Both the position numbers and the translations under genes were made by a program. From positions 385,702,001 through 385,766,000 of the forward strand of contig NW_027362768.1 of NCBI RefSeq assembly GCF_046119375.1: 64,000 nucleotides of DNA, written 5' to 3'. Of this stretch, positions 1,745-55,400 are shown in pieces. Source of the DNA: Phyllobates terribilis (lineage: Eukaryota). The notes beneath the pieces are model-generated. The model saw only the letters and a list, made by a program, of their open reading frames with translations. It did no database searches and was not told where the DNA came from. How positions within the stretch are numbered: the first letter of the stretch is position 1; each line of letters starts with the position of its first letter.

Positions 1745-2154
1745 TGTAGTGCGCCAACCACGACCAGAAAACACACTAATCTATATGTGCGTGATCCAAA
1801 CTCATGACCATTAACATTAGAGGCGGCATTACTCAGAATTCAGCACAAGTAACCCCGACCCCCCCAGTGACCGGATATAAACCTTCAATCTGAGTCATTC
1901 CAGGAAGAGACCTGAATTCAATTAAGAACATAAAGTTTCACATTTCTCTGGTTGTTTAGTTTTTTTTTTTATTACATTTTTTGTTTTTCTTTATGAAACA
2001 ATTTTTATTGCTGCAGCCAAAACCAGAACTAAATCCCTATTTAGGGTTAGAAAAATTGTAAAACCATGAAAGAAGCTGTTAGTAATGAACGAAGGCGGGA
2101 TTGTAATGTGCTCGCTGCATTTGGCTCATTAGCTGCTCCGTTTCTGTCATCTCA

Positions 2155-3540
2155 GCCGCTAATGACGCAGAGCGCAGCAGCGAATGACGCAGAGCGCAGC
2201 AGCGAATTACACAGAGCGCAGCCGCTAATGACGCAGAGCAGCAGTGAATTACACAGAGCGCAGCAGTGAATTACACAGAGCACAGCCGCTAATGACGCAG
2301 AGCGCAGCAGCGAATGACGCAGAGCGCAGCAGCGAATGACGCAGAGCGCAGCAGTGAATTACGCAGAGCGCAGCAGTGAATTACACAGAGCACAGCCGCT
2401 AATGACGCAGAGCGCAGCAGCGAATGACGCAGAGCGCAGCCGCTAATGACGCAGAGCACAGCAGTGAATTACACAGAGCACAGCCGTTAATGAGGCAGAG
2501 CACAGCAGCGAATGAGCAAGAGCGCAGCAGCGAATGAGCAAGAGCGCAGCAGCGAATGAGGCAGAGCGCAGCAGCGAATGAGGCAGAGCGCAGCAGCGAA
2601 TTACGCAGAGCGCAGCAGCGAATTACGCAGAGCGCAGCCCCTAATGACGCAGAGCAGCAGTGAATTACACAGAGCGCAGCCACTAATGACGCAGAGCAGC
2701 AGTGAATTACGCACAGCGCAGCCGCTAATGACGCAGAGCAGCAGTGAATTACGCACAGCGCAGCTGCTAATGACGCAGAGTGCAGCCGCTAATGACGCAG
2801 AGCAGCAGTGAATTACACAGAGCGCAGCAGTGAATGATGCAGAGCGCAGCAGCGAATGACGCAGAGCAGCAGTGAATTACGCACAGCGCAGCCGCTAATG
2901 ACGCAGAGCAGCAGTGAATTACACAGAGCGCAGCAGTGAATTACGCAGAGCGCAGCAGCGAATGACGCAGAGCGCAGCAGCGAATGACGCAGAGCGCAGC
3001 AGCGAATGACTGCAGCGAATGACGCAGAGCGCAGCAGTGAATGACTGCAGCGAATGACGCAGAGCGCAGCAGTGAATGACGCAGAGCGCAGCAGTGAATG
3101 ACGCAGAGCAGCAGCGAATGACGCAGAGCGCAGCAGCGAATGACGCAGAGCGCAGCAGTGAATGACTGCAGCGAATGACGCAGAGCGCAGCAGTGAATGA
3201 CGCAGAGCGCAGCAGTGAATGACGCAGAGCAGCAGTGAATGACGCAGAGCGCAGCAGTGAATGACGCAGAGCGCAGCAGTGAATGACGCAGAGTGCAGCA
3301 GTGAATGACGCAGAGCGCAGCAGTGAATGACGCAGAGCGCAGCAGTGAATGACGCAGAGCGCAGCAGCGAATGACGCAGAGCGCAGCAGCGAATGACGCA
3401 GAGCGCAGTAGCGAATTACACAGAGCGCAGCAGTGAATTACACAGAGCGCAGCAGTGAATTACACAGAGCGCAGCCGCTAATGACGCAGAGCAGCAGTGA
3501 ATGACGCAGAGCGCAGCAGTGAATGACGCAGAGCGCAGCA
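2155..3540. repeat. About 22-bp minisatellite (gcagagcgcagcagcgaatgac and variants)
   Basis: Continuous tandem units with gaattacac and gccgctaatgac variants. Confidence 0.95.
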
Positions 3541-5784: not shown

Positions 5785-6970
5785 AGCAGCCGCCCCTCCC
5801 TCCATCCCGTATACCGCAGCCGCCCCTCGCTCCATCCCGTATACCGCAGCCGCCCCTCGCTCCCTTCATTACGCCGCTATAGAGCATCCGCCCCTCGCTT
5901 TGTCCCATATGCCGCAGCCGCCCCTCGCTCCCTCCCGTACGCCGCAGCCGCCCCTCGCTCCGTCCGGTATGGCGCAGCCGCCCCTCGCTCCGTCCCGTAC
6001 GCCGCAGCCGCCCCTCGCTCCGTCCCGTACGCCGCAGCCGCCCCTCGCTCCGTCCCGTACGCCGCCCCTCGCTTTGTCCCATATGCTGCAGCCGCCCCTC
6101 GCTCCCTCCCGTGTACCGCAGCAGCCCCTTGCTGCGTCCCGTATACCGCAGCCGCCCCTCGCTCTGTCCCGTATACTGCAGCCTTCAGCCGCCCCTCGCT
6201 CCATCCCGTATACCGCAGCCGCCCCTCGCTCCCTCCATTACGCTGCTATAGAGCATCCGCCCCTCGCTTTGTCCCATATGCCGCAGCCGCCCCTCGCTCC
6301 GTAAGGTAAGGCGCAGCCGCCCCTCGCTCCGTCCCGTACGCCGCAGCCGCCCCTCGCCCCGTCCCGTAGGCCGCAGCCGCCCCTCGCTCCGTCCCGTACG
6401 CCGCAGCCGCCCCTCGCCCCGTACGCCGCAGCCGCCCCTCGCTCCGTCCCGTACGCCGCAGCCGCCCCTCGCTCCGTCCCGTACGCCGCAGCCGCCCCTC
6501 GCTCCGTCCCGTACGCCGCAGCCGCCCCTCGCTCCGTCCCGTACGCCGCAGCCGCCCCTCGCTCCGTCCCGTACGCCGCAGCCGCCCCTCGCTCCGTCCC
6601 GTACACCGCCCCTCGCTCCGTCCCGTACACCGCCCCTCGCTCCGTCCCGTACACCGCCCCTCGCTTTGTCCCATATGCTGCAGCCGCCCCTCGCTTTGTC
6701 CCATATGCTGCAGCCGGCCCTCGCTCTGTCCCGTATACCGCAACCACCCCTCACTCTGTCCCATATGCTGCAGCCGCCCCTCGCTTTGTCCCATATCCTG
6801 CAGCCGCCCCTCGCTTTGTCCCATATGCTGCAGCCGGCCCTCGCTCTGTCCCGTATACCGCAACCACCCCTCGCTCTGTCCCGTATACCGCAACCACCCC
6901 TCGCTCTGTCCCGTATACCGCAACCACCCCTCGCTCTGTCCCGTACGCCGCTATAGAGCAGCCGCCCCTC
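5785..6970. repeat. GC-rich minisatellite of about 24-30 bp (gccgcccctcgctccgtcccgtacgccgca) in NPRL2 intron 7
   Basis: Tandem units read directly; C-rich on plus, so G-rich in the NPRL2 pre-mRNA. Confidence 0.95.
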
Positions 6971-7599: not shown

Positions 7600-8270
7600 C
7601 CAGCTGGCCGCCCCTTACATTGGCCCCCAGGCGGCCGGCCCGCCCCTTACATTGGCCCCCAGGCGGCCGGCCCGCCCCTTACATTGGACCCCAGGCGGCC
7701 GGCCCGCCCCTTACATTGGACCCCAGGCGGCCGGCCCGCCCCTTACATTGGACCCCAGGCGGCCGGCCCGCCCCTTACATTGGACCCCAGGCGGCCGGCC
7801 CGCCCCTTACATTGGACCCCACGCGGCCAGCCCGCCCCTTACATTGGACCCCACGCGGCCAGCCCGCCCCTTACATTGGACCCCACGCGGCCAGCCCGCC
7901 CCTTACATTGGACCCCACGCGGCCAGCCCGCCCCTTACATTGGACCCCACGCAGCCGGCCCGCCCCTTACATTGGACCCCACGCGGCCGGCCCGCCCCTT
8001 ACATTGGACCCCACGCGGCCGGCCCGCCCCTTACATTGGACCCCACGCGGCCGGCCCGCCCCTTACATTGGACCCCACGCGGCCGGCCCGCCCCTTACAT
8101 TGGACCCCACGCGGCCGGCCCGCCCCTTACATTGGACCCCACGCGGCCGGCCCGCCCCTTACATTGGACCCCAGGCGGCCGGCCCGCCCCTTACATTGGA
8201 CCCCAGGCGGCCGGCCGCCCCCTTACATTGGACCCCAGGCGGCCGGCCGCCCCCTTACATTGGACCCCCA
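7600..8270. repeat. 32-bp minisatellite (cccgccccttacattggaccccaggcggccgg), about 21 copies, NPRL2 intron 7
   Basis: Tandem units; the ORF track shows a 32-aa period equal to 3 x 32 nt. Confidence 0.96.
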
Positions 8271-10324: not shown

Positions 10325-10885
10325 GACGAGCCCAGAGCCAGGAGCGAATCCGGAGCTGAAAATCAGGAGCAGATCTGGAGCTGAGGACCAGGAGCCGAGA
10401 GCCAGGAGCAGATCTGGATCTGAGGACCAGGAGCCGAGAGCCAGGGGCACACCTGAAGCGGATCCAGAGTCCGGAGGAGATCCAGAGCCAGGAGCAGATC
10501 CAGAGCCAGGAGCACACCCGAAGCGGATCCAGAGCCCGGAGCAGATCCAGAGCCCGGAGCAGATCCAGAGCCCGGAGCAGATCCAGAGCCCGGAGCAGAT
10601 CCAGAGCCCGGAGCAGATCTGGAGCTGAAGACCAGGAGCCGAGAGCCAGGAGCACACCCGAAGCGGATCCAGAGCCCGAAGCGGATCCAGAGCCCGGAGT
10701 GGATCCAGAGCCCGGAGCGGATCCAGAGCCCGGAGCGGATCCAGAGCCAGGAGCAGATGTGGAGCTGAGGACCAGGAGCTGAGAGCCAGGAGCACACCCG
10801 AAGCGGATCCAGAGCCCGGAGTGGATCCAGAGCTGAGGACCAGGAGCCGAGAGCCAGGAATGGATCCAGAGCCAGGAGCGGATCT
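10325..10885. repeat. Composite minisatellite with an 18-bp core (gagcagatccagagcccg), NPRL2 intron 4
   Basis: Tandem core units interspersed with gagctgaggaccaggagcc and gcacacccgaagcgg sub-blocks. Confidence 0.9.
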
Positions 10886-11059
10886 GGAGCTCCGAGATCT
10901 GTGGCAGAAGAGGAATAGACGTCCTGTAGCCTAGTGATAGGGGCCCTCATAGGTGATTTATTACCCGACTCTTCTGTCTCATGTAAGGTGGATACCCGCC
11001 CCCTGCGCGCTGCCCGGGGGCGATAAGGAAAATTCAATGTCATCCCGAGTGGTCAGTAC

Positions 11060-11168
11060 CTATGGGCAGGGAACATTCTCCGGTGGAGTTCAGCCCCTCC
11101 AGCAGGATGCTCATGATGGGCACCAGTCTCTGCTTACTGTCCTCATTAGAGATGAAGCCGGACTCTAG
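11060..11168 (-). CDS. NPRL2: NPRL2 coding exon 4: [36 protein letters not shown](D)
   Basis: ttgtag acceptor, GTACTG donor, 109 nt. Confidence 0.95.
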
Positions 11169-11199
11169 CTACAACGAGAGAACAGGAAAGTGATGGGCT

Positions 11200-11999
11200 G
11201 AGCCGCCGTGCTGCCCTATATAGAGTACAGTGCTAACCACTGAGCCACAGTGCAGCCCTATATATAGTACAGTGCTAACCACTGAGCCACAGTGCAGCCC
11301 TATATATAGTACAGTGCTAACCACTCAGCCGTCGTGCTGCCCTATATATAGTACAGTGCTAACCACCATGCTGCCTTATATATAGTACAGTGCTAGCCAC
11401 TGAGCCACCATGCTACCCTATATATAGTAGTGCTGACCATTGAGCCACTGTGCTGACCACTGAGCCACCGTGCTACCATATAGTACAGTGCTAACCACTG
11501 AGCCACCGTGCTGCCCTATATATAGTACAGTGCTAACCACTGATCCACCGTGCTGCTCTATACATATATATATATAGTACAGTGCTAACCACTGAGCCAC
11601 CGTGCTGCCCTATACATATATATAGTACAGTGCTAACCACTGAGCCACCGTGCTGCCCTATACATATAGTACAGTGCTAACCACTGAGCTACTGTGATGC
11701 TCTATACATATATATATAGTACAGTGCTAACCACTGAGCCACCGTGCTGCCCTATAGTACAGTGCTAACCACTGAGCCACCGTGCTGCCCTATATAGTAC
11801 AGTGCTAACCACTGTGCTGCTCTATACATATATATATAGTACAGTGCTAACCACTGAGCCACCGTGCTGCTCTATACATATATATAGTACAGTGCTAACC
11901 ACTGAGCCACCGTGCTGCCCTATGTATAGTAGTGCTAACCACTGAGCCACCGTGCTGCCCTATATATAGTACAGTGCTAACCACTGAGCCACTGAGCTG

Positions 12000-12040
<41 letters not shown>

Positions 12041-14712
12041 AGTGATAACCACTGAGCCACCATACTGCTCTATACATATATATAGTACAGTGCTAACCAC
12101 TGAGCCACCGTGCTGCCCTATATATAGTACAGTGCTAACCACTGAGCCACCGTACTGCCCTGTATAGAGTATAGTGCTAACCACTGAGCCACCGTGCTGC
12201 CCTATATAGTACAGTGCCAACCACTGAGCCACCGTGCTGCTCTATACATATAGTACAGTGCTAACCACTGAGCCATCGTGCTGCTCTATACATATATATA
12301 GTACAGTGCTAACCACTGAGCCACCGTGCTGCCCATAGTACAATGCTAACCACTGAGCCACCGTGCTGCTCTATACATATATATATATAGTACAGTGCTG
12401 ACCACTGAGCTACTGTGCTGCCCATAGTACAATGCTAACCACTGAGCCACCGTGCTGCACTATACATATATATATAGTACAGTGCTGACCACTGAGCTAC
12501 TGTGCTGCTCTATACATATAGTACAGTGCTAACCACTGAGCCACCGTGCTGCTCTATACATATATATAGTACAGTGCTAACCACTGAGCCACCGTGCTGC
12601 CCTATATATAGTACAGTGCTAACCACTGAGCCACCGTACTGCCCTGTATAGAGTATAGTGCTAACCACTGAGCCACCGTGCTGCCCTATATAGTACAGTG
12701 CCAACCACTGAGCCACCGTGCTGCTCTATACATATAGTACAGTGCTAACCACTGAGCCATCGTGCTGCTCTATACATATATATAGTACAGTGCTAACCAC
12801 TGAGCCACCGTGCTGCCCATAGTACAATGCTAACCAATGAGCCACCGTGCTGCTCTATACATATATATATATAGTACAGTGCTGACCACTGAGCTACTGT
12901 GCTGCCCATAGTACAATGCTAACCACTGAGCCACCGTGCTGCACTATACATATATATATATAGTACAGTGCTGACCACTGAGCTACTGTGCTGCTCTATA
13001 CATATAGTACAGTGCTAACCACTGAGCCACCGTGCTGCTCTATACATATATATAGTACAGTGCTAACCACTGAGCCACCGTGCTGCCCTATGTATAGTAC
13101 AGTGCTAACCACTGAGCCACCGTGCTGCTCTATACATATATATAGTACAGTGCTAACCACTGAGCCACCGTGCTGCTCTATACATATATATAGTACAGTG
13201 CTAACCACTGAGCCACCGTGCTGCTCTATACATATATATAGTACAGTGCTAACCACTGAGCCACCGTGCTGCTCTATACATATATATAGTACAGTGCTAA
13301 CCACTGAGCCACCGTGCTGCTCTATACATATATATAGTACAGTGCTAACCACTGAGCCACTGTGCTGCTCTATACATATATATAGTACAGTGCTAACCAC
13401 TGAGCCACCGTGCTGCTCTATACATATATATAGTACAGTGCTAACCACTGAGCCACCGTGCTGCTCTATAGATATAGTACAGTGCTAACCACTGAGCCAC
13501 CGTGCTGCCCTATGTATAGTACAGTGCTAACCACTGAGCCACCGTGCTGCCCTATATATAGTACAGTGCTAACCACTGAGCCACTGTGCTGCTCTATACA
13601 TATATATAGTACAGTGATAACCACTGAGCCACCATACTGCTCTATACATATATATAGTACAGTGCTAACCACTGAGCCACCGTGCTGCCCTATATATAGT
13701 ACAGTGCTAACCACTGAGCCACCGTACTGCCCTATATAGTACAGTGCCAACCACTGAGCCACCGTGCTGCCCTATATATAGTACAGTGCTAACCACTGAG
13801 CCATTGTGCTGCCCTATACATATATAGTACAGTGATAACCACTGAGCCACCGTGCTGCTCTATACATATATATATATAGTACAGTGCTAACCACTGAGCC
13901 ATTGTGCTGCCCTATACATATATAGTACAGTGATAACCACTGAGCCACCGTGCTGCTCTATACATATATATATATATATAGTACAATGCTAACCACTGAG
14001 CCACCGTGCTGCTCTATACATATATAGTACAGTGCTAACCACTGAGCCACCACACTGCCCTATATATAGTACAGTGCTAACCACTGAGCCACCGTGCTGC
14101 TCTATACATATATAGTACAGTGCTAACCACTGAGCCACCGTGCTGCTCTATACATATATAGTACAGTGCTAACCACTGAGCCACCGTGCTGCTCTATACA
14201 TATATAGTACAGTGCTAACCACTGAGCCACCGCGCTGCCCTATATATAGTACAGTGCTAACCACTGAGCCACCGCGCTGCCCTATATATAGTACAGTGCT
14301 AACCACTGAGCCACCGTGCTGCTCTATACATATATAGTACAGTGCTAACCACTGAGCCACCGTGCTGCTCTATACATATATAGTACAGTGCTAACCACTG
14401 AGCCACCGTGCTGCTCTATACATATATAGTACAGTGCTAACCACTGAGCCACCGCGCTGCCCTATATATAGTACAGTGCTAACCACTGAGCCACCGCACT
14501 GCCCTATATATAGTACAGTGCTAACCACTGAGCCACCGCGCTGCCCTATATATAGTACAGTGCTAACCACTGAGCCACCGCGCTGCCCTATATATAGTAC
14601 AGTGCTAACCACTGAGCCACCGCGCTGCCCTATATATAGTACAGTGCTAACCACTGAGTCACCGTGCTGCCCTATATATAGTACAGTGCTAACCACTGAG
14701 CCACCGCGCTGC
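11200..14712 (-). repeat. Tandem array of about 39-47 bp units (about 80 copies): GGGCAGCACGGTGGCTCAGTGGTTAGCACTG plus TAC(TA)n, the 5' head of a tRNA-derived SINE; NPRL2 intron 3
   Basis: The plus-strand unit cagtgctaaccactgagccaccgtgctgccc(ta)n reverse-complements to a tRNA-like head containing the A-box TGGCTCAGTGG. No B-box follows. Confidence 0.9.
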
Positions 14713-14815
14713 TCTTTCCCTGTAGCACACTGACATGAAGCCTCAGCCTCTTATTACACCTCGTGCAGTGCACGGCCCCAGTAATCGGTGCGCGGCCCCC
14801 GTCATCGGTGCGGAC

Positions 14816-14984
14816 CTCCAGCGTCTTCAGGTATCCCGCGAGCTTCTTCACGATGGGCTCCAGCGCGCACGTCTTGGCTCTGGCGTTGCACACAAAGCCC
14901 AGGTTAAAGAGCAGAGCGTTGCGGCTGTACTTCTTGTGCTCGATGCAAACCGGGCAACCGATCAGCTTCTTGTCCATGGCGGTC
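14816..14984 (-). CDS. NPRL2: NPRL2 coding exon 3: (V)[56 protein letters not shown]
   Basis: tctcag acceptor, GTCCGC donor, 169 nt. Contains the GATOR1 arginine finger (YSRN; human R78, here R77, codon 14923-14921). Confidence 0.97.
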
Positions 14985-15136
14985 CTGAGAACAGACGCGC
15001 GTCAGTGAGACGGCCGCCATCGCAGCTGCTGCTCCCCTGCCAGGAGCTTAGCTACACGGCGATACATCCGCTGTAGAACCATAATGGCGCCACCCTGAGC
15101 GTTCCCCCGGCATTACAGCGGCCCGGACGTCACTCA

Positions 15137-15292
<156 letters not shown>

Positions 15293-15296
15293 TCAC

Positions 15297-15371
15297 CTGG
15301 TAACTGATCTTGGGGCCGAGGGTCGGATGGAACTCGCTGAAGAAAACGCACTCGATCCTCCGACTGGACAT
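15297..15371 (-). CDS. NPRL2: NPRL2 (GATOR1 complex subunit) coding exon 1: [25 protein letters not shown]
   Basis: ATG at 15371-15369, GTGAGT donor at 15296. The 11 exons total 1140 nt, giving 379 aa plus stop with no internal stop. Confidence 0.96.
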
Positions 15372-15404
15372 CACTGCAGACAGAGAGGTGGTCACTGAGG
15401 GGGG

Positions 15405-16975
15405 AGGGGCCGAGCGAGGGCGGGGGGAGGGGCCGAGCGAGGGCAGGGGGAGGGGCCGAGCGAGGGCAGGGGGAGGGGCCGAGCGAGGGCAGGGGGAGGG
15501 GCCGAGTGAGGGCAGGGGAGGGGCCGAGCGAGGGCAGGGGGAGGGGCCGAGCGAGAGCAGGGGGAGGGGCCGAGCGAGGGCAGGGGCCGAGCGAGGGCAG
15601 GGGGAGGGGCCTAATGAGGGCAGGGGAGGGGCCTAATGAGGGCAGGGGCCTAATGAGGGCAGGGGGAGGGGCCTAATGAGGGCAGGGGAGGGGCCTAGTG
15701 AGGGCAGGGGGAGGGGCCTAATGAGGGCAGGGGCCGAGCGAGGGCAGGGGGGGGCCAAGCGAGGGCAGGGGGAGGGGGCGAGCGAGGGCAGGGGAGGGGC
15801 CGAGCGAGGGCAGGGGCCGAGCGAGGGCAGGGGCCGAGCGAGGGCAGGGGGAGGGGCCGAGCGAGGGGCCGAGCGAGGGCAGGGGGAGGGGCCGAGCGAG
15901 GGGCCGAGCGAGGGCAGGGGAGGGGCCGAGCGAGGGCAGGGGAGGGGCCTAATGAGGGCAGGGGCCTAATGAGGGCAGGGGAGGGCCTAATGAGGGCAGG
16001 GGGAGGGGCCTAATGAGGGCAGGGGCCGAGCGAGGGCAGGGGGGGGCCAAGCGAGGGGCCGAGCGAGGGCAGGGGAGGGGCCGAGCGAGGGCAGGGGAGG
16101 GGCCGAGCGAGGGCAGGGGAGGGGCCGAGCGAGGGCAGGGGGAGGGGCCGAGCGAGGGCAGGGGAGGGGCCGAGCGAGGGCAGGGGGAGGGGCCGAGCGA
16201 GGGCAGGGGGAGGGGCCGAGCGAGGGCAGGGGGAGGGGCCGAGCGAGGGCAGGGGAGGGCCTAATGAGGGCAGGGGGAGGGGCCTAATGAGGGCAGGGGC
16301 CGAGCGAGGGCAGGGGGGGCCAAGCGAGGGCAGGGGCCGAGCGAGGGCAGGGGCCGAGCGAGGGCAGGGGCCGAGCGAGGGCAGGGGAGGGGCCGAGCGA
16401 GGGCAGGGGAGGGGCCGAGCGAGGGCAGGGGAGGGGCCGAGCGAGGGCAGGGGAGGGGCCGAGCGAGGGCAGGGGAGGGGCCGAGCGAGGGCAGGGGAGG
16501 GGCCGAGCGAGGGCAGGGGCCGAGCAAGGGCAGGGGAGGGGCCGAGCAAGGGCAGGGGGAGGGGCCGAGCGAGGGCAGGGCCGAGCGAGGGCAGGGGAGG
16601 GGCCTAATGAGGGCAGGGGAGGGGCCTAATGAGGGCAGGGGAGGGGCCTAATGAGGGCAGGGGAGGGGCCTAATGAGGGCAGGGGCCTAATGAGGGCAGG
16701 GGAGGGGCCTAACGAGGGCAGGGGAGGGGCCTAATGAGGGCAGGGGCCTAACGAGGGCAGGGGAGGGGCCGAGCGAGGGCAGGGGGAGGGGCCGAGCGAG
16801 GGCAGGGGGAGGGGCCGAGCGAGGGCAGGGGAGGGGCCGAGCGAGGGCAGGGGAGGGGCCGAGCGAGGGCAGGGGAGGGGCCGAGCGAGGGCAGGGGAGG
16901 GGCTGAGCGAGGGCAGGGGAGGGGCCGAGCGAGGGCAGGGGAGGGGCCGAGCGAGGGCAGGGGAGGGGCCGAGCA
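15405..16975. repeat. Very G-rich minisatellite of about 22 bp (ggggccgagcgagggcagggga; cctaat variant) upstream of the NPRL2 ATG
   Basis: Continuous G3-G5 tracts on the plus strand. Confidence 0.96.
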
Positions 16976-17639
16976 CACACTGACAGTAACCAGTAAGAAA
17001 GCCCCGTGCTCAGACCCCGCCCACCAGGAGCCAGCTGCATTGGGACCTGGCTCTGCTTCTGGATTCGGGATCAGGGTGCAGAGCGACTGAATAATATAAT
17101 AAACTAATTTAAAAAAAATATTAGAAAAAAAAATAAAACTTCATATCTTTAATCCAGAAGTATAACAAAAAAAAAGAAAATATATATATAAAATTGAAAT
17201 GGCACAGTGCGGTTGTTCAGTCGCGGCTCCTCCGCTGAAAAATTGCAACAAAAACCAATCGACTCATTATAAAAACATTTCACCACTAAAATAAAGGAAT
17301 AATAACCTCCCTGGTGCGGTGCCGCTGTTATTGCACTGAGACCAAGAATCACAAGTGCTGTAAACTAAACCCAAAGACAATGGCAGAACTGTGGCCTTTC
17401 ACCATCACCCCCTGCTGTCTGCACTATGATTGCAGCTCTGAGGCAGAACACTCATAAAGAAGCGACCATGTTCTGCACTCTCTGCCCTTCCTCCTGGCTT
17501 CTCCCCCGTCTGCGGGTTATCCCCTGACCCCAGAGCAGCACTCACTCTTCTTCTTCCTCCTCCTCTTCTCCTTCTTCTTCCTCCACTCCTTCAGGTATTC
17601 TCACCCCCACTAAGAAGAGAAATGAACCCGTCCAGCACA

Positions 17640-33107: not shown

Positions 33108-33687
33108 AGAACACAAGGATCTACAGTCCGATATCGGACATGCTGGATTCTTATCTCACCTGACAGTCGTCAGTCAGATCCGCCCATAGACCGTCAGCAG
33201 AACCTGTTGGTTTCAGTGTATTTGGCAAAATTTAGTCTAATGTGCATGGGGGTCTTAACTAGTATCTGAAGGGTATGAGCACTATCAGGGTACGTGCGCA
33301 CGACTTCTATGAATCCGTTGAGTATTTCAGACGGAAGACGCTTCAGGACACAGAGTCGTCATTTTGTACAGAAGTAACTTTTTTTTTTTTTTTTTTGCAT
33401 CTTTTTGGTCGTCTTTTACCCATTAACTTTAGTTTTAAATGGGAGTTACTTCTTTTAGTCGCTTCATGTCTTGGAAAACCTGAAGTGGTTAACAAACCCC
33501 TCAACAGACTGAACAGCGAGTCGTCTTTACGTTGTAGTGAATCACTTCATTGTTTTTAGCACTAATTCCAAGAGGGTTAAAGAGCGGATCTGCCTGAAAA
33601 CCGCTGTGTGCACATAACCTTAATCTGACTGATCAGTAGGGGGCGTGAGCGCGAAAAGTGCCTGGGACAGCATGAAACCCAAAAACT

Positions 33688-36600
33688 GTATGTACACAGT
33701 GACTCCACCAGCAGCATAGTGAGCGCAGCTCTGGAGTATAATACAGGATGTAACTCAGGATCAGTAATGTAATGTATGTACACAGTGACTGCACCAGCAG
33801 AATAGTGAGTGCAGCTCTGGAGTATAATACAAGAGGTAACTCAGGATCAGTAATGTAATGTATGTACACAGTGACTGCACCAGCAGAATAGTGAGTGCAG
33901 CTCTGGAGTATAATACAGGATGTAACCCAGGATCAGTAATGTAATGTATGTACACAGTGACTGCACCAGCAGAATAGTGAGTGCAGCTCTGGAGTATAAT
34001 ACAGGATATAACTCAGGATCAGTAATGTAATGTATGTACACAGTGACTCCACCAGCAGCATAGTGAGCGCAGCTCTGGAGTATAATACAGGAGGTAACTC
34101 AGGATCAGTAATGTAATGTATGTACACAGTGACTCCACCAGCAGCATAGTGAGCGCAGCTCTGGAGTATAATACAGGATGTAACTCAGGATCAGTAATGT
34201 AATGTATGTACACAGTGACTGCACCAGCAGAATAGTGAGTGCAGCTCTGGAGTATAATACAGGATGTAACTCAGGATCAGTAATGTAATGTATGTACACA
34301 GTGACTGCACCAGCAGAATAGTGAGTGCAGCTCTGGAGTATAAAAAAGGATGTAACTCAGGATCAGTAATGTATGTACACAGTGACTGCACCAGCAGAAT
34401 AGTGAGTGCAGCTCTGGAGTATAATACAGGAGGTAACTCAGGTTCTGTAATGTAATGTATGTACACAGTGACTCCACCAGCAGAATAGTGAGTGCAGCTC
34501 TGGAGTATAATACAGGATGTAACTCAGGATCAGTAATGTAATGTATGTACACAGTGACTGCACCAGCAGAATAGTGAGTGCAGCTCTGGAGTATAATACA
34601 GGATGTAACTCAGGATCAGTAATGTAATGTATGTACACAGTGACTGCACCAGCAGAATAGTGAGTGCAGCTCTGGGGTATAATACAGGATCAGTAATGTC
34701 TGTACACAGTGACTACACCAGCAGAATAGTGAGTGCAGCTCTGGAGTATAATACAGGATGTAACTCAGGATCAGTAATGTAATGTATGTACATAGTGAGT
34801 GCAGCTCTGGAGTATAATACAGGATGTAACTCAGGATCAGTAATGTAATGTATGTACACAGTGACTGCACCAGCAGAATAGTGAGTGCAGCTCTGGGGTA
34901 TAATACAGGATCAGTAATGTCTGTACACAGTGACTACACCAGCAGAATAGTGAGTGCAGCTCTGGAGTATAATACAGGAGGTAACACAGGATCAGTAATG
35001 TATGTACAAAGTGACTGCATCAGCAGAATAGTGAGCGCAGCTCTGGAGTATAATACAGGATGTAACTCCGGATCAGTAATGTAATGTCTGTACACAGTGA
35101 CTGCACCAGCAGAATAGTGAGTGCAGCTCTGGAGTATAATACAGAATGTAACTCGGGATCAGTAATGTAATGTATGTACACAGTGACTGCACCAGCAGAA
35201 TAGTGAGTGCTGCTCTGGAGTATAATACAGGATGTAACTCTGGATCAGTAATGTAATGTATGTACACAGTGACTGCACCAGCAGAATAGTGAGTGCAGCT
35301 CTGGAGTATAATACAAGATGTAACTCAGGATCAGTAATGTATGTACACAGTGACTGCACCAGCAGAATAGTGAGTGCAGCTCTGGAGGATAATACAGGAT
35401 GTAACTCTGGATCAGTAATGTAATGTATGTACACAGTGATTGCACCAGCAGAATAGTGAGTGCTGCTCTGGAGTATAATACAGGATGTAACTCTGGATCA
35501 GTAATGTAATGTATGTACACAGTGACTGCACCAGCAGAATAGTGAGTGCAGCTCTGGAGTATAATACAAGATGTAACTCAGGATCAGTAATGTATGTACA
35601 CAGTGACTGCACCAGCAGAATAGTGAGTGCAGCTCTGGAGAATAATACAGGAGGTAACTCAGGATCAGTAATGTATGTACACAGTGACTGCACCAGCAGA
35701 ATAGTGAGTGCAGCTCTGGAGTATAATACAGGAGGTAACTCAGGATCAGTAATGTATGTACACAGTGACTGCACCAGCAGAATAGTGAGTGCAGCTCTGG
35801 GGTATAATACAGGATCAGTAATGTCTGTACACAGTGACTACACCAGCAGAATAGTGAGTGCAGCTCTGGAGTATAATACAGGATGTAACTCAGGATCAGT
35901 AATGTAATGTATGTACATAGTGAGTGCAGCTCTGGAGTATAATACAGGATGTAACTCAGGATCAGTAATGTAATGTATGTACACAGTGACTGCACCAGCA
36001 GAATAGTGAGTGCAGCTCTGGGGTATAATACAGGATCAGTAATGTCTGTACACAGTGACTACACCAGCAGAATAGTGAGTGCAGCTCTGGAGTATAATAC
36101 AGGAGGTAACTCAGGATCAGTAATGTCTGTACACAGTGACTGCACCAGCAGAATAGTGAGTGCAGCTCTGGAGTATAATACAGGAGGTAACTCAGGATCA
36201 GTAATGTATGTACACAGTGACTGCACCAGCAGAATAGTGAGTGCAGCTCTGGAGTATAATACAGGATGTAACTCAGGATCAGTAATGTAATGTATGTACA
36301 CAGTGACTGCACCAGCAGAATAGTGAGTGCAGCTCTGGAGTATAATAAAGGATGTAACTCAGGATCAGTAATGTATGTACACAGTGACTGCACCAGCAGA
36401 ATAGTGAGTGCAGCTCTGGAGTATAATAAAGGATGTAACTCAGGATCAGTAATGTATGTACACAGTGACTGCACCAGCAGAATAGTGAGTGCAGCTCTGG
36501 AGAATAATACAGGAGGTAACTCAGGATCTGTAATGTAATGTATGTACACAGTGACTCCACCAGCAGAATAGTGAGTGCAGCTCTGGAGTATAATACAGGA

Positions 36601-39600
36601 TGTAACTCAGGATCAGTAATGTAATGTATGTACATAGTGAGTGCAGCTCTGGAGTATAATACAGGATGTAACTCGGGATCAGTAATGTAATGTATGTACA
36701 CAGTGACTGCACCAGCAGAATAGTGAGTGCAGCTCTGGGGTATAATACAGGATCAGTAATATCTGTACACAGTGACTACACCAGCAGAATAGTGAGTGCA
36801 GCTCTGGAGTATAATACAGGAGGTAACTCAGGATCAGTAATGTCTGTACACAGTGACTACACCAGCAGAATAGTGAGTGCAGCTCTGGAGTATAATACAG
36901 GATATAACTCAGGATCAGTAATGTAATGTATGTACACAGTGACTGCACCAGCAGAATAGGGAGTGCAGCTCTGCAGTATAATACAGGATGTAACTCCGGA
37001 TCAGTAATGTAATGTATGTACACAGTGACTGCACCAGCAGAATAGTGAGTGCAGCTCTGGAGTATAATACAGAAGGTAACTCAGGATCAGTAATGTATGT
37101 ACACAGTGACTGCACCAGCAGAATAGTGAGTGCAGCTCTGGAGGATAATACAGGATGTAACTCAGGATCAGTAATGTAATGTATGTACACAGTGACTGCA
37201 CCAGCAGAATAGTGAGTGCAGCTCTGGAGAATAATACAGGAGGTAACTCAGGATCAATAATGTATGTACACAGTGACTGCACCAGCAGAATAGTGAGTGC
37301 AGCTCTGGAGTATAATACAGGAGGTAACTCAGGATCAGTAATGTATGTACACAGTGACTGCATCAGCAGAATAGTGAGTGCAGCTCTGGAGTATAATACA
37401 GGAGGTAACTCAGGATCAGTAATGTAATGTATGTACACAGTGACTGCACCAGCAGAATAGTGAGTGCAGCTCTGGAGTATAATACAGGATGTAACTCAGG
37501 ATCAGTAATGTATGTACACAGTGACTGCACCAGCAGAATAGTGAGTGCAGCTCTGGAGGATAATACAGGATGTAACTCAGGATCAGTAATGTATGTACAC
37601 AGTGACTGCACCAGCAGAATAGTGAGTGCAGCTCTGGAGAATAATACAGGATATAACTCGGGATCAGTAATGTATGTACACAGTGACTGCACCAGCAGCA
37701 TAGTGAGTGCAGCTCTGGAGGATAATACAGGATTTAACTCAGGATAAGTAATGTATGTACACAGTGACTGCACCAGCAGAATAGTGAGTGCAGCTCTGGA
37801 GGATAATACAGGATGTAACTCAGGATCAGTAATGTAATGTATGTACACAGTGACTGCACCAGCAGAATAGTGAGTGCAGCTCTGGAGTATAATACAGGAT
37901 GTAACTCAGGATCAGTAATGTAATGTATGTACACAGTGGCTGCACCAGCAGAATAGTGAGTGCAGCTCTGGAGTACAATACAGGAGGTAACTCAGGATCA
38001 GTAATGTAATATATGTACACAGTGACTACACCAGCAGAATAGTGAGTGCAGCTCTGGAGTATAATACAGGAGGTAACTCAGGATCAGTAATGTATGTACA
38101 CAGTGATTGCACCAGCAGAATAGTGAGTGCAGCTCTGGAGGATAATACAGGATGTAATGTATGTACACAGTGACTGCACCAGCAGAATAGTGAGTGCAGC
38201 TCTGGAGGATAATACAGGATGTAACTCAGGATCAGTAATGTATGTACACAGTGACTACACCAGCAGAATAGTAAGTGCAGCTCTGGAGTATAATACAGGA
38301 TGTAACTCAGGATCAGTAATGTAATGTATGTACACAGTGACTGCACCAGCAGAATAGTGAGTGCAACTCTGCAGTATAATACAGGATGTAACTCAGGATC
38401 AGTAATGTAATGTATGTACACAGTGACTGCACCAGCAGAATAGTGAGTGCAGCTCTGGAATATAATACAGGATGTAACTCCGGATCAGTAATGTAATGTA
38501 TGTACACAGTGACTGCATCAGCAGAATAGTGAGCGCAGCTCTGGAGTATAACACAGGATGTAACTCAGGATCAGTAATGTATGTACACAGTGATTGCACC
38601 AGCAGAATAGTGAATGCAGCTCTGGAGTATAATAAAGGATGTAACTCAGGATCAGTAATGTATGGACACAGTGACTGCACCAGCAGAATAGTGAGTGCAG
38701 CTCTGGAGGATAATACAGGATGTAACTCAGGATCAGTAATGTATGGACACAGTGACTGCACCAGCAGAATAGTGAGTGCAGCTCTGGAGGATAATACAGG
38801 ATGTAACTCAGGATAAGTAATGTATGTACACAGTGACTGCACCAGCAGAATAGTGAGTGCAGCTCTGGAGGATAATACAGGATGTAACTCAGGATAAGTA
38901 ATGTACGTACACAGTGACTGCACCAGCAGAATAGTGAGTGCAGCTCTGGAGTATAATACAGGAGGTAACTCAGGATCAGTAATGTAATGTACACAGTGAC
39001 TGCATCAGCAGAATAGTGAGCGCAGCTCTGGAGTATAATACAGGATGTAACTCCGGATCAGTAATGTAATGTATGTACACAGTGACTGCACCAGCAGAAT
39101 AGTGAGTGCAGCTCTGGGGTATAATACAGGATCAGTAATGTGTGTACACAGTGACTACACCAGCAGAATAGTGAGTGCAGCTCTGGAGTATAATACAGGA
39201 TGTTACTCAGGATCAGTAATGTAATGTATGTACATAGTGACTACACCAGCAGAATAGTGAGTGCAGCTCTGGAGTATAATACAGGAGGTAACTCAGGATC
39301 AGTAATGTATGTACACAGTGATTGCACCAGCAGAATAGTGAGTGCAGCTCTGGAGTATAATACAGGATGTAACTCAGGATCAGTAATGTAATGTATGTAC
39401 ACAGTGATTGCACCAGCAGAATAGTGAGTGCAGCTCTGGAGTATAATACAGGATGTAACTCAGGATCAGTAATGTAATGTATGTACACAGTGACTGCACC
39501 AGCAGAATAGTGAGTGCAGCTCTGGAGGATAATACAGGATGTAACTCAGGATCAGTAATGTATGTACACAGTGACTGCACCAGCAGCGTAGTGAGTGCAG

Positions 39601-42570
39601 CTCTGGAGTATAATACAGGATGTAACTCAGGATCAGTGATGTAATGTATGTACATAGTGACTACACCAGCAGAATAGTGAGTGCAGCTCTGGAGTATAAT
39701 ACAGGAGGTAACTCAGGATCAGTAATGTAATGTAATGTATGTACACAGTGACTGCACCAGCAGAATAGTGAGCGCAGCTCTGGAGTATAATACAGGATAT
39801 AACTCAGGATCAGTAATGTATGTACACAGTGATTGCACCAGCAGAATAGTGAGTGCAGCTCTGCAGTATAATACAGGATGTAACTCCGGATCAGTAATGT
39901 AATGTTTGCACACAGTGACTGCACCAGCAGAATAGTGAGCGCAGCTCTGGAGTATAATACAGGATATAACTCAGGATCAGTAATGTATGTACACAGTGAC
40001 TGCACCAGCAGAATAGTGAGTGCAGCTCTGGAGTATAATACAGGATGTAACTCCGGATCAGTAATGTATGTACACAGTGACTGCACCAGCAGAATAGTGA
40101 GTGCAGCTCTGGAGGATAATACAGGATGTAACTCTGGATCAGTAATGTATGTACACAGTGATTGAACCAGCAGAATAGTGAGTGCAGCTCTGGGGTATAA
40201 TACAGGATGTAACTCTGGATCAGTAATGTAATGTATGTACACAGTGATTGCACCATCAGAATAGTGAGTGCAGCTCTGGGGTATAATACAGGATGTAACT
40301 CTGGATCAGTAATGTAATGTATGTACACAGTGATTGCACCAGCAGAATAGTGAGTGCAGCTCTGGAGTATAATACAGGATGTAACTCAGGATCAGTAATG
40401 TAATGTATGTACACAGTGACTACACCAGCAGAATAGTGAGTGCAGCTCTGGGGTATAATACAGGATGTAACTCCGGATCAGTAATGTAACGTATGTACAC
40501 AGTGACTGCACCAGCAGAATAGTGAGCGCAGCTCTGGAGTATAATACAGGATGTAACTCAGGATCAGTAATGTATGTACACAGTGATTGCACCAGCAGAA
40601 TAGTGAATGCAGCTCTGGAGTATAATAAAGGATGTAACTCAGGATCAGTAATGTATGTACACAGTGACTGCACCAGCAGAATAGTGAGTGCAGCTCTGGA
40701 GGATAATACAGGATGTAACTCAGGATAAGTAATGTATGTACACAGTGACTGCACCAGCAGAATAGTGAGTGCAGCTCTGGAGTATAATACAGGAGGTAAC
40801 TCAGGATCAGTAATGTAATGTAATTTATGTACACAGTGACTGCACCAGCAGAATAGTGAGCGCAGCTCTGGAGTATAATACAGGATATAACTCAGGATCA
40901 GTAATGTATGTACACAGTGATTGCACCAGCAGAATAGTGAGTGCAGCTCTGCAGTATAATACAGGATGTAACTCCGGATCAGTAATGTAATGTTTGTACA
41001 CAGTGACTGCACCAGCAGAATAGTGAGCGCAGCTCTGGAGTATAATACAGGATGTAACTCAGGATCAGTAATGTAATGTATGTACACAGTGTTTCCACCA
41101 GCAGAATAGTGAGTGCAGCTCTGGAGTATAATACAGGAGGTAACTCAGGATCAGTAATGTAATGTAATGTATGTACACAGTGACTGCACCAGCAGAATAG
41201 TGAGTGCAGCTCTGCAGTATAATACAGGATGTAACTCCGGATCAGTAATGTAATGTATGTACACAGTGACTGCACCAGCAGAATAGTGAGTGCAGCTCTG
41301 GAGTATAATACAGGAGGTAACTCCGGATCAGTAATGTAATGTATGTACATAGTGACTACACCAGCAGAATAGTGAGTGCAGCTCTGGAGTATAATACAGG
41401 AGGTAACTCAGGATCAGTAATGTATGTACACAGTGACTGCATCAGCAGAATAGTGAGCGCAGCTCTGGAGTATAATACAGGATGTAACTCCGGATCAGTA
41501 ATGTAATGTATGTACACAGTCACTCCACCAGCAGAATAGTGAGTGCAGCTCTGGAGTATAATACAGGATGTAACTCTGGATCAGTAATGTAATGTATGTA
41601 CACAGTGACTGCACCAGCAGAATAGTGAGCGCAGCTCTGGAGTATAATACAGGATGTAACTCAGGATCAGTAATGTATGTACACAGTGATTGCACCAGCA
41701 GAATAGTGAATGCAGCTCTGGAGTATAATAAAGGATGTAACTCAGGATCAGTAATGTATGTACACAGTGATTCCACCAGCAGAATAGTGAGTGCAGCTCT
41801 GGAGTATAATACAGGATGTAACTCTGGATCAGTAATGTAATGTATGTACACAGTGACTGCACCAGCAGAATAGTGAGCGCAGCTCTGGAGTATAATACAG
41901 GATGTAACTCAGGATCAGTAATGTATGTACACAGTGATTGCACCAGCAGAATAGTGAATGCAGCTCTGGAGTATAATAAAGGATGTAACTCAGGATCAGT
42001 AATGTATGTACACAGTGACTGCACCAGCAGAATAGTGAGTGCAGCTCTGGAGGATAATACAGGATGTAACTCAGGATAAGTAATGTATGTACACAGTGAC
42101 TGCACCAGCAGAATAGTGAGTGCAGCTCTGGAGTATAATACAGGAGGTAACTCAGGATCAGTAATGTAATGTAATTTATGTACACAGTGACTGCACCAGC
42201 AGAATAGTGAGTGCTGCTCTGGAGTGTAATACAGGATGTAACTCCGGATCAGTAATGTAATGTATGTACACAGTGACTGCACCAGCAGAATAGTGAGTGC
42301 TGCTCTGGAGTGTAATACTGGATGTAACCCAGGATCAGTAATGTAATGTATGTACACAGTGACTGCACCAGCAGAATAGTGAGTGCAGCTCTGGTGTATA
42401 ATACTGGATGTAACCCAGGATCAGTTATGTATGTACACAGTGACTGCACCAGCAGAATAGTGAGTGCTCCTCTGGGGTATAATACAGGATGTAACTCAGG
42501 ATCAGTAATGTATGTACACAGTGACTGCACCAGCAGAATAATGAGTGCAGCTCCGGAGTTCAATACTGGA
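33688..42570. repeat. About 8.9-kb 81/86-bp tandem array (about 105 units) between the CYB561D2 and TMEM115 3' ends
   Basis: Continuous units differing by a tgtaa indel and recurrent point variants. Confidence 0.97.
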
Positions 42571-42744
42571 TAAATAATGCTGCTGGCTCATCTGGTTGGT
42601 GAGTTACTCTGCTACATTCTGGTCAGTTTGGAGTTTTCGGACCCCCTATCTATTGCTCCTCAGTACTATACCTATTAGACCAGCGCACACGCCCCAAGTC
42701 TTTTCCTGGGGTCAGACACACACAATTGGATAATTTTCAAAAAG

Positions 42745-50300: not shown

Positions 50301-51739
50301 GTACATATATAATTATATACAGGAGATGCCCAGGTTATACCAGCTGTACATATATAATTATATACAGGAGATGCCCAGGTTATACCAGCCGTACATATAT
50401 AATTATATACAGGAGATGCCCAGATTATACCAGCCGTACATATATAATTATATACAGGAGATGCCCAGGTTATACCAGCCGTACATATATAATTATATAC
50501 AGGAGATGCCCAGGTTATACCAGCCGTACATATATAATTATATACAGGAGATGCCCAGGTTATACCAGCCGTACATATATAATTATATACAGGAGATGCC
50601 CAGGTTATACCAGCCGTACATATATAATTATATACAGGAGATGCCCAGGTTATACCAGCCGTACATATATATTTATATACAGGAGATGCCCAGGTTATAC
50701 CAGCCGTACATATATAATTATATACAGGAGATGCCCAGGTTATACCAGCCGTACATATATAATTATATACAGGAGATGTCCAGGTTATACCAGCTGTACA
50801 TATATAATTATATACAGGAGATGCCCAGGTTATACCAGCTGTACATGTATAATAATATACAGGAGATGCCCAGGTTACACCATCTGTACATATATAATTA
50901 TATACAGGAGATGCCCAGGTTATACCAGCTGTACATATATAATTATATACAGGAGATGCCCAGGTTATACCGGCTGTACATATATAATTATACACAGGAG
51001 ATGCCCAGGTTATACCAGCTGTACATATATAATAATATACAGGAGATGCCCAGGTTATACCAGCTGTACATATATAATTATATACAGGAGATGCCCAGGT
51101 TATACCAGCTGTACATATATAATTATATACAGGAGATGCCCAGGTTATACCGGCTGTACATATATAATTATATACAGGAGATACCCAGATTATACCAGCT
51201 GTACATGTATAATTATATACAGAAGATGCTCAGGTTATACCAGCCGTACATATATAATTATATACAGGAGATGCCCAGGTTATACCAGCTGTACATATAT
51301 AATTATATACAGGAGGTGCCCAGGTTATACCAGCTGTACATATATAGTTATATACAGGAGATACCCAGGTTATACCAGCTGTACATATATAATTATATAC
51401 AGGAGGTTCCCAGGTTATACCAGCCGTACATAGTTATATACAGGAGATGCCCCGGTTATACGGGCTGTACATATATAATTATATACAGGAGATACCCAGG
51501 TTATACCAGCTGTACATATATAATTATATACAGGAGATACCCAGGTTATACTGGCTGTACATATATAATTATATACAGGAGATGCCCCGGTTATACCAGC
51601 CGTACATAGTTATATACAGGAGATACCCAGGTTATACCGGCTGTACATATATAATTATATACAGGAGATACCCAGGTTATACGGGCTGTACATATATAAT
51701 TATATACAGGAGATGCCCAGGTTATTCCAGCTGTACATA

Positions 51740-55017: not shown

Positions 55018-55400
55018 TATAATTATATGCAGGAGATGCCCAGGTTATACCAGCTCTACATACAGTATATAATTATATACAGGAGATGCCCAGGTTATAC
55101 CAGCTGTACATATATAATTATATACAGGAGATGCCCGGGTTATACCAGCTCTACATACAGTATATAATTATATACAGGAGATGCCCAGGTTATACCAGCT
55201 TTACATACAGTATATAATTATATACAGGAGATGCCCAGGTTATACCAGCTCTACATATATAATTATATACAGAAGATGCCCAAGTTATACCAGCTGTACA
55301 TATATAGTTATGTACAGGAGAAGCCCAGGTTAAACCAGCTGTACATATATAGTTATGTACAGGAGAAGCCCAGGTTAAACCAGCTGTACATATATAGTTA

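What the first reader, a model, noticed from the sequence alone, without database searches (positions are those of the whole stretch)
11200..14712. 3.5-kb intronic satellite built from the Pol III A-box head of a tRNA-derived SINE
Seen: on the NPRL2 sense strand each of about 80 units reads GGGCAGCACGGTGGCTCAGTGGTTAGCACTG followed by TAC(TA)n. TGGCTCAGTGG fits the Pol III A-box consensus TRGCNNARYGG. No B-box (GTTCGA-like) or SINE body follows in the window. Known: GGGCRGCACRGTGGC.CAGTGGTTAGCAC is how tRNA-derived V-SINE-type elements of fish and amphibians begin (recalled, not searched). Inference: the first 31 nt of a SINE were cut at a fixed point, joined to a TA microsatellite and amplified. 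The result is a dense A-box-only array that could affect TFIIIC occupancy or insulation, or yield tRNA-5'-fragment-like small RNAs from the excised intron. I know of no description of such an array.
Basis: partly seen in the sequence, partly recalled or inferred. Interest (0 to 1): 0.78.

Follow-up and report, generated by a model that had tools for sequence, protein, structure and literature searches.

The report
SINE-head minisatellite filling an NPRL2 intron
A 3.5-kb tandem repeat whose ~42-48-bp unit is the first 32 bases of a common mobile element (a tRNA-derived SINE) plus a TA-rich spacer has swollen a ~130-base intron of the NPRL2 gene to 3.6 kb; it is spliced out normally and looks like a tolerated by-product of very repeat-prone DNA.

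Summary
Window 11198-14714 (minus strand) carries about 79 head-to-tail units, with modal lengths of 42, 46 and 48 bp. Seventy copies of the 31-mer lie within 3 mismatches, against 0 expected by chance.

The array makes up 96% of a 3,647-nt GT-AG intron of NPRL2. RNA contigs show this intron removed exactly.

- In 22 dispersed SINE copies from metagenome contigs, the 31-mer plus one base starts the element. It is followed there by an anticodon arm, a B box and a conserved core.
- DNA contigs of the same organism show the motif dispersed. Upstream flanks differ from copy to copy, and downstream comes a B-box-bearing body. The tandem junctions sit at only about 2-12 times single-copy depth.

The array has 72 A boxes but no B box, no T-run terminator and no tRNA fold. 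TFIIIC is anchored by the B box, so the proposed TFIIIC or insulator role is unlikely.

The kind is already described: SINE-derived satellites in squamates (2023) and Alu-derived minisatellites in humans. About 60% of this window is tandem arrays, so this is one more in repeat-prone DNA.

Earlier scan notes report other intron-filling minisatellites in this genome, but none reports this array.

Verdict: a real, neutral SINE-head-derived minisatellite and a new member of a known kind.

The parts
11198..14714 (-). Tandem array of about 79 units. Each unit is SINE bases 1-32 (4-nt leader GGGC, then tRNA-like acceptor 5' strand and D arm with the A box TGGCTCAGTGG) plus a TA-rich spacer.
   Evidence: SINE alignment; tRNA register
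11169..14815 (-). NPRL2 intron, 3,647 nt, GT...AG, phase 0, between codons equivalent to human 113 and 114. The array is 96% of it.
   Evidence: RNA contigs X9/X10 end at 14816 and continue with letters identical to window 11139-11168; splice dinucleotides checked
14816..14983 (-). NPRL2 exon upstream of the intron (matches human NPRL2 residues 58-113, E 1e-30).
11060..11168 (-). NPRL2 exon downstream of the intron (matches human NPRL2 residues 114-149, E 4e-10).
14715..14815 (-). Unique 5' part of the intron (about 100 nt), with zero depth in the RNA contigs.
11169..11197 (-). Unique last 29 nt of the intron: a likely branch site (CATCAC, A at -23, by eye), a pyrimidine tract and the AG. The array stops at -30, inside a truncated head (...GGCTCAG).
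   Evidence: branch site is inference
12088..13055 (-). Two adjacent copies of an 11-unit, 484-bp block: 481 matches, 1 mismatch and 4 gap letters, the gaps lying in TA runs.
14055..14497 (-). A 221-nt exact repeat at a shift of 222 bp, i.e. a 5-unit duplication.
13093..13360 (-). Run of identical 48-bp GAGCAG-type units (220-nt exact match at a shift of 48).
12003..12036 (.). Longest spacer, (TA)17. It is the source of the weak miRNA-like Rfam chance hits.

Best explanation
This is a SINE-derived minisatellite. A fragment made of the first 31-32 bases of an abundant tRNA-derived SINE became flanked by TA-rich sequence. That fragment holds the 4-nt leader, the acceptor 5' strand, the D arm and the A box. 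The head-plus-spacer unit was then multiplied in place by replication slippage and unequal exchange, first unit by unit and later in blocks of 2, 5 and 11 units. TA-run slippage and CpG-type transitions then diversified the units. The array inflated an ancestral intron of about 130 nt in the compact NPRL2 gene to 3.6 kb. It is tolerated because the donor site, the last 29 nt (branch site, pyrimidine tract, AG) and the reading frame are untouched, and the intron is removed exactly. It is expected to have no Pol III promoter activity and no sequence-specific function. Shown here: the array, its SINE-head identity, the fixed breakpoint, dispersed SINE copies in the same organism, the nested recent duplications and exact splicing. 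Inferred: the order of events, the slippage/unequal-exchange mechanism and neutrality.
For: Array and statistics. SINE identity: 22 single-copy dispersed elements begin with the same GGGCA + 24-mer + TGT. They continue into an anticodon arm, a B box and a conserved core. Their nhmmer profile hits the window only in the array and only at model positions 2-32. Rfam's tRNA model aligns end to end to one such element, with tRNA position 1 at base 5 of the 31-mer (22.3 bits, below threshold). Same organism: DNA contigs from two samples of two studies pile on the head at 1e4-6e5 summed depth, against 8-12 on the unique flank. Loose ends upstream of base 1 have low agreement (0.48-0.59), meaning many different flanks. 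Loose ends after ...CACTG(T) agree on a continuation that ends in GGGTCCTGGGTTCA, a B-box-like motif. The longest contigs that span head-spacer-head have depths of 5-135, about 0.6-8 times (X1) or 2-12 times (X5) single-copy depth, consistent with this array alone. Both DNA samples join the unique flank to the first unit. Recent block duplications. Splicing: one RNA contig in each of two runs joins 14816 to 11168, with zero depth on the unique intron part. Context: 14 separate arrays cover 60% of the window, and the next NPRL2 intron upstream holds an unrelated 22-bp array. Precedent: PMC10702118 and PMC3389668.
Against: Neither end of the array carries a longer terminal unit running on into the SINE body or tail, which most squamate SINE-derived satellites have. 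Birth in situ from a full insertion is therefore not shown, and the array seed may have come from elsewhere. The origin of the TA-rich spacer is unresolved, because I could not obtain the 3' part of the host's SINE. No full SINE copy lies in the 64-kb window. Summed contig depths are not copy numbers, and short contigs cannot exclude other arrays with different spacers. Array length was not verified independently, since short-read contigs collapse it. Neutrality is inferred, not tested.
Confidence: 0.85

Rival explanations
1. This is one locus of a multi-locus SINE-derived satellite family, like the squamate sSats. The unit would have formed once elsewhere and spread, and this intron received a seed by recombination or repair, not a SINE insertion. 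This is compatible with the best explanation for what the unit is; it differs only on where the array was born.
For: No extended terminal unit and no SINE body or tail remnant at either array edge. TCAG occurs at both junctions, in the flank just before the first unit and at the end of the truncated last head, which could mark microhomology-mediated insertion. 1,723 and 2,692 distinct contigs lie on the 300-bp array part, far more than 79 units could yield. Squamate sSats are multi-locus.
Against: The many short contigs are explained by dispersed SINE heads. The longest contigs shown that contain a head-spacer-head junction have only about 2-12 times single-copy depth. No such junction was found in viral contigs, which is uninformative. 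The genome-wide count was not possible with these tools.
Confidence: 0.2
2. The array is a functional Pol III-related element: about 72 A boxes would recruit TFIIIC (tauA) or act as an insulator, or the excised intron would be processed into small RNAs resembling tRNA 5' fragments.
For: 72 perfect A-box matches in one orientation. RNA-run contigs do lie on the head bins.
Against: There is no B box in the intron. TFIIIC is anchored by the high-affinity B box, and human tauA stayed off the A box even on a complete tRNA gene (PMC11811891). Known extra-TFIIIC sites and tDNA insulators depend on B boxes (established knowledge). There is no TTTT on either strand of the array, no tRNA fold and no significant RNA structure (z = -1.7). 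RNA depth on the heads is expected from SINE copies in other transcripts, and the unique intron flank has zero RNA depth. The window holds 13 other arrays of unrelated sequence.
Confidence: 0.04
3. The unit comes straight from a tRNA gene or belongs to the older amphibian tRNA-like tandem families (OAX/satellite I, Rana/PolIII, PolIII/TAN), not from a SINE.
For: The head is tRNA-like. Amphibians have several tRNA-related tandem families whose SINE origin is unconfirmed.
Against: The unit includes the 4-nt leader GGGC upstream of tRNA position 1. It starts exactly where dispersed copies start, both in the metagenome loci and in the same organism. Those families have units of 200-741 bp with A and B boxes, whereas this unit is 42-48 bp without a B box. 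ARAGORN and Rfam find no tRNA in the window.
Confidence: 0.04
4. The array is an assembly artefact, with its length inflated or a collapsed repeat misplaced.
For: Short-read contigs cannot span it, and some units had zero laid depth.
Against: Contigs from two samples of two studies join the unique flank 14715-15400 to the first unit without any difference. The mRNA splice partners lie on either side of the array. The internal structure (nested near-identical blocks, a degenerate edge, variable TA runs) is that of a real array.
Confidence: 0.03

Closest known systems
SINE-derived satellites (sSat1/2/3) of squamate reptiles (Vassetzky, Kosushkin & Ryskov 2023, PMC10702118)
   Same: Tandem arrays whose unit is a fixed portion of a tRNA-related SINE dispersed in the same genome. 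Some units cover the 5'/tRNA part and carry 14-44 extra nt of unknown origin. Locus-specific alternating subvariants and greater homogeneity in long arrays are also shared.
   Different: Units there are 67-215 nt, against 42-48 here with only 32 SINE bases. Most sSats have an extended terminal unit reaching a SINE terminus, and this array has none. sSats are multi-locus and favour subtelomeres, whereas this is a single intronic locus as far as could be seen. The host here is said to be a frog, and the 2023 paper leaves open whether sSats exist outside squamates.
Alu-derived minisatellites in humans (Jurka & Gentles 2006, as cited in PMC3389668; Ahmed & Liang 2012, PMC3389668)
   Same: Parts of a SINE are turned into minisatellites and expanded locally. 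Short direct repeats flanking the segment are proposed as the trigger, and any region of the element can be used.
   Different: Most Alu-derived arrays have 2-3 units. Here there are about 79 units, with a microsatellite built into each.
Amphibian tRNA-like tandem families: Xenopus OAX/satellite I, Rana/PolIII, newt PolIII/TAN, Hydromantes Hy/PolIII
   Same: Tandem repeats in amphibians that contain tRNA-related sequence.
   Different: Those have units of 200-741 bp, mostly with complete internal promoters, are very abundant, and have no matching SINE known. Here the unit is short, has an A box only, and is identical to a dispersed SINE head.
V-SINE superfamily (e.g. fish elements, Racla of Rana clamitans, SINE2-1_XT of Xenopus tropicalis; PMC6887750, PMC5804259)
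   Same: The dispersed elements that share the head have a tRNA-related head with A and B boxes and a strongly conserved central block. V-SINEs are reported in bony fishes and anurans.
   Different: The array units are fragments, not SINE copies. I recalled that the central block is the V domain but did not test it, and the body of the host's own SINE beyond the B box was not seen.
Extra-TFIIIC (ETC) sites and tDNA/SINE B2 insulators
   Same: They are built from Pol III promoter elements outside transcribed genes.
   Different: They rest on B boxes, which give high-affinity tauB binding. This array has only A boxes.

Membership tests
SINE-derived satellite (sSat sensu Vassetzky et al. 2023) | Head-to-tail tandem array of four or more units | tested here: met
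   About 79 units
SINE-derived satellite (sSat sensu Vassetzky et al. 2023) | Unit is similar to a defined portion of a SINE that is dispersed in the same genome | tested here: met
   Bases 1-32 are identical to SINE heads. Same-organism contigs show dispersed copies with varied 5' flanks and a B-box-bearing continuation.
SINE-derived satellite (sSat sensu Vassetzky et al. 2023) | Longer terminal unit continuing to a SINE terminus (common in the family, not universal) | tested here: not met
   The 5' edge has no SINE body and the 3' edge is a truncated head. The paper reports minor variants without this feature.
SINE-derived satellite (sSat sensu Vassetzky et al. 2023) | Many loci per genome, with a subtelomeric preference | not testable with these tools
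   Only one 64-kb window is readable. Junction-contig depth hints at a single locus.
Complete tRNA-derived SINE copy (V-SINE type) | Internal Pol III promoter with both A box and B box | tested here: not met
   A box found 72 times; no B box in the intron
Complete tRNA-derived SINE copy (V-SINE type) | Conserved central domain and LINE-related 3' tail | tested here: not met
   The nhmmer profile of 220 nt of dispersed copies matches only positions 2-32, with no hit elsewhere in the window.
tRNA gene | Cloverleaf detectable by ARAGORN or Rfam RF00005 | tested here: not met
   0 genes, no match at gathering score, and no tRNA hit at E<=10 in the array
Type 2 Pol III transcription unit | A box, then a B box 30-67 bp downstream, then a T-run terminator | tested here: not met
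   A box only. There is no TTTT or AAAA anywhere in the 3,515-bp array. The A-to-B spacing is from PMC11811891.
ETC site / TFIIIC insulator | B-box motif bound by tauB | tested here: not met
   No B-box-like site in 11169-14815. Actual binding is not testable here.
NPRL2 intron (host context) | Flanking exons encode contiguous NPRL2 residues and are joined in RNA | tested here: met
   Exons searched one by one, by reference; RNA contigs join them.

The most novel reading that the evidence does not exclude
The roughly 72 co-oriented A-box/D-arm heads are not inert. As DNA they could load tauA/TFIIIC or another head-binding factor cooperatively without a B box. As part of the excised intron they could be cut into small RNAs resembling tRNA 5' fragments. 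In either case the array length, a variable-number tandem repeat (VNTR), would tune NPRL2 (a GATOR1 subunit) expression or a small-RNA pool.
Probability: 0.04. Interest if true: 0.65.

Novelty: new member of a known kind. Interest (0 to 1): 0.25.

Why it matters
This is a clean, base-resolved example of a SINE fragment turning into a minisatellite. The breakpoint is exact: SINE base 1 on one side and base 31-32 on the other. Matching dispersed copies exist in the same organism.

If the host is an anuran, as the scan's notes say, it fills a stated gap. The 2023 squamate paper could not say whether SINE-derived satellites exist outside squamates. A 2025 Rana temporaria study calls a SINE origin of amphibian tandem repeats suggested but unconfirmed.

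It also shows that a 28-fold intron expansion ending 30 nt from an acceptor site can leave splicing intact. It does not point to a new mechanism or function.

Tried and rejected
- **SINE copies elsewhere in the window.** The 31-mer and 20-mer with 3 mismatches, an nhmmer profile run with --max at E<=10, and the host B-box continuation with 3 mismatches all found none. The host SINE's body and tail therefore stayed unknown, and the origin of the spacer could not be tested.
- **An untested idea from memory.** The spacer may be the SINE's own TA-containing 3' region, joined to the head by an internal deletion at CTGT microhomology.
- **Viral-contig scans.** Scans for the head, the host continuation and the head-spacer junction each gave 0.
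- **Full-text search for sequence strings.** The head core gave 0 papers. The core block gave one unrelated zebrafish paper.
- **Laying reads on the whole array.** Following the tool's own advice I laid the part 14420-15400, which has 7 units.
- **Rfam at a permissive threshold.** It gave only miRNA-family hits far below their gathering scores, centred on the (TA)n palindromes. I rejected these as chance.
- **RNA folding of three units.** Not significant, z = -1.74.
- **Findings search.** Searches by sequence and by 'SINE ... satellite' words were blank.
- **Ogiwara et al. 2002 (V-SINE definition).** The paper is not held, so the V-domain assignment was not checked.
- **Species identity.** Run names are coded, so the species could not be established with my own calls.
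Full report
**1. The observation**

Reading 10900-15100 shows an uninterrupted tandem array on the minus strand. TRF places it at 11198-14712 with periods 42, 48 and 92 and about 72 copies.
All hits are on the minus strand between 11228 and 14714, and none appeared in 100 shuffles.
- A 20-mer core gives 77 hits. A fuzzy anchor splits the array into 78 units plus a truncated last head.
- Fourteen heads are exact and mean head identity is 95.9%. The two commonest variants are GAGCAG... (16 copies) and GGGCAG... (14 copies). A local GCGCGG variant clusters at 14210-14714.
- Head-to-head distances are mostly 42 (22 times), 48 (13 times) and 46 (9 times).
- The spacer reads TAC(TA)n, often followed by TGTA, then TAG. 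TA runs range from 2 to 17 repeats.

**2. Host gene and intron**

The two flanking exons were searched one by one, by reference. Window 14816-14983(-) matches human NPRL2 residues 58-113 (E 1e-30). Window 11061-11168(-) matches residues 114-149 (E 4e-10). I built no joined model.
- In each of two runs labelled as probable RNA, one contig of 1.6-1.7 kb covers exons 15294-15373, 15137-15226 and 14816-14983. It then continues with 30 letters identical to window 11139-11168.
- The intron is therefore 11169-14815: 3,647 nt, GT...AG, phase 0.
- The array is 96.4% of the intron. Only about 100 nt at the donor side and 29 nt at the acceptor side are unique.
- The neighbouring introns seen in the same contigs are 153 and 67 nt. 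The ancestral intron was therefore probably about 130 nt, which is inference.
- The array stops at -30 from the acceptor, inside a truncated head. The remaining 29 nt hold a plausible branch site, the pyrimidine tract and the AG (read by eye).
- The unique intron part has zero depth in the RNA contigs, against 170-296 on the exons.

**3. What the unit is**

An exact 24-mer from the head was scanned against metagenome contigs. It found 22 loci, each with a single copy.
- In these loci the motif is preceded by GGGCA (or a close variant) and followed by TGT.
- It then continues into an anticodon-arm-like stretch, a B box (GGGTTCGAATCC and variants) and a strongly conserved block. These loci are dispersed tRNA-derived SINEs of unknown eukaryotic hosts.
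- An nhmmer profile of 220 nt of these elements hits the window 80 times. All hits are in the array and all end at model position 30-35, mostly 2-32 or 3-32. Nothing matches outside the array.
- Rfam's tRNA model aligns end to end to one such element (22.3 bits, below the gathering score), with tRNA position 1 at base 5 of the 31-mer.
- The unit is therefore a 4-nt leader, the acceptor 5' strand, the D arm with the A box, and the first bases of the anticodon stem.
- The array itself has no tRNA and no B-box-like site. It has 72 perfect A boxes and no run of four T or four A.

**4. The same SINE in the same organism**

As the tool advised, I laid 14420-15400, which holds seven units plus the flank.
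- In DNA contigs from two samples of two studies, the unique flank has depth 8.4 and 11.7. The head bins sum to 1e4-6e5, from 1,723 and 2,692 contigs.
- Loose ends upstream of head base 1 (places 14672-14675 and 14713-14715) have low agreement (0.48-0.59), which means many different flanks.
- Loose ends downstream of ...CACTG(T) agree on a continuation. Read on the SINE strand it is TGCTTTGCAGCG, or CAGCTTTGCAGCGGTGGGGTCCTGGGTTCA, which ends in a B-box-like motif.
- The head is therefore the true 5' end of a highly repeated, dispersed, B-box-bearing element in this organism. The array shares exactly bases 1 to 31-32 with it.
- The longest contigs that span head-spacer-head have depths of 5-135, about 0.6-8 times (X1) or 2-12 times (X5) single-copy depth. 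That fits this array alone.
- Summed contig depths are not copy numbers, and only the longest pieces are listed, so other arrays with different spacers are not excluded.
- Both DNA samples join the unique flank to the first unit without any difference.

**5. How the array grew**

There are nested, nearly identical blocks:
- an 11-unit, 484-bp block duplicated at 99% identity (481 matches, 1 mismatch, 4 gap letters in TA runs);
- a 221-nt exact repeat at a shift of 222;
- runs of identical 48-, 46- and 42-bp units.

Other features point the same way.
- Units near the acceptor (11198-11480) are degenerate, with internal deletions, while the donor-side units are homogeneous.
- Many substitutions are transitions at the head's CpG (CACGG to CATGG or CACAG).
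- This is the usual picture of a minisatellite evolving by slippage and unequal exchange, with microsatellite slippage inside each unit. The mechanism is inferred.

**6. Context**

TRF finds 14 separate strong arrays covering 38.2 kb, or 60% of the window.
- One is an unrelated 22-bp G-rich array (15401-16974). It lies in the next NPRL2 intron upstream, because the RNA contig's next exon maps at 17546.
- Earlier notes of this scan are unchecked AI notes. They call this genome a poison frog and list many intron-filling minisatellites that are still spliced out, one of them copied from a transposon end.
- I did not test those notes. My own TRF result agrees that the region is highly array-prone.

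**7. Function**

Human TFIIIC is anchored by high-affinity B-box recognition. [quoted passage not shown]
- An A-box-only array with no terminator is therefore a poor candidate for TFIIIC loading or Pol III transcription.
- Three units folded as RNA are not more stable than shuffles (z = -1.74).
- RNA-run contigs on the heads are expected from SINE copies in other transcripts.
- I therefore commit to a neutral, tolerated expansion (confidence 0.85). A Pol III-related or small-RNA role gets about 0.04.

**8. Comparison with what is known**

- SINE-derived satellites were described in 56 squamate genomes. Their units of 67-215 nt cover various SINE parts, including 5'/tRNA parts with added sequence of unknown origin. 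They show alternating subvariants and, usually, an extended terminal unit (PMC10702118).
- In humans, 23% of mini/satellites derive from transposable elements, Alu included (PMC3389668).
- Amphibian tRNA-like tandem families (OAX, Rana/PolIII, PolIII/TAN, Hy/PolIII) have much longer units and no matching SINE. A 2025 Rana temporaria study calls their SINE origin unconfirmed (PMC12054243).
- V-SINEs are reported in bony fishes and anurans (PMC6887750 and PMC5804259). That the shared central block is the V domain is my recollection, not a test.
- The present array meets the two core criteria of a SINE-derived satellite. It lacks the extended terminal unit, has an unusually short chimeric unit, and is single-locus as far as could be seen.

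**9. Verdict**

The functional speculation and the claim that no such array has been described are not supported. The array is a new member of a known kind, and interest is low to moderate.

Noticed in passing
window 15401-16974: A 1.57-kb array of a 22-bp G-rich unit (about 74 copies; C-rich on the NPRL2 sense strand) fills most of the next NPRL2 intron upstream. That intron runs from 15374 to about 17545, because the RNA contig's next exon maps at 17546-17575. So a second intron of the same gene is swollen by an unrelated minisatellite.
   Followed up: partly
window 1-64000: Fourteen separate tandem arrays (TRF score >=400) cover 38.2 kb, or 60% of the window. They include an 8.9-kb 86-bp array (33687-42571) and a 45-bp array of more than 16 kb that runs off the window end (47801-64000).
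   Followed up: partly
window 2153-3540, 5786-6951, 7608-8268, 10457-10884: Four further GC-rich minisatellites (22-, 30-, 32- and 18/140-bp units) lie downstream of the NPRL2 exons studied, possibly in later NPRL2 introns or the neighbouring gene. Their position relative to exons was not determined.
   Followed up: no
window 14453-14684 (table 5): DNA contigs of both samples show joints that skip 140, 179 or 230 bp inside the array. These are most simply short-read graph collapses across identical units, but they could also reflect unit-number variants between copies or alleles.
   Followed up: no
L015:957-1200 and L021:865-1100 (metagenome contigs): Two of the dispersed SINE copies carry what looks like a duplicated tRNA-like B-box segment (two GGGTTCAA-type motifs separated by about 40-60 nt). 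That would be an internal duplication within a SINE, the kind of first step from which SINE-derived tandem repeats could start.
   Followed up: no
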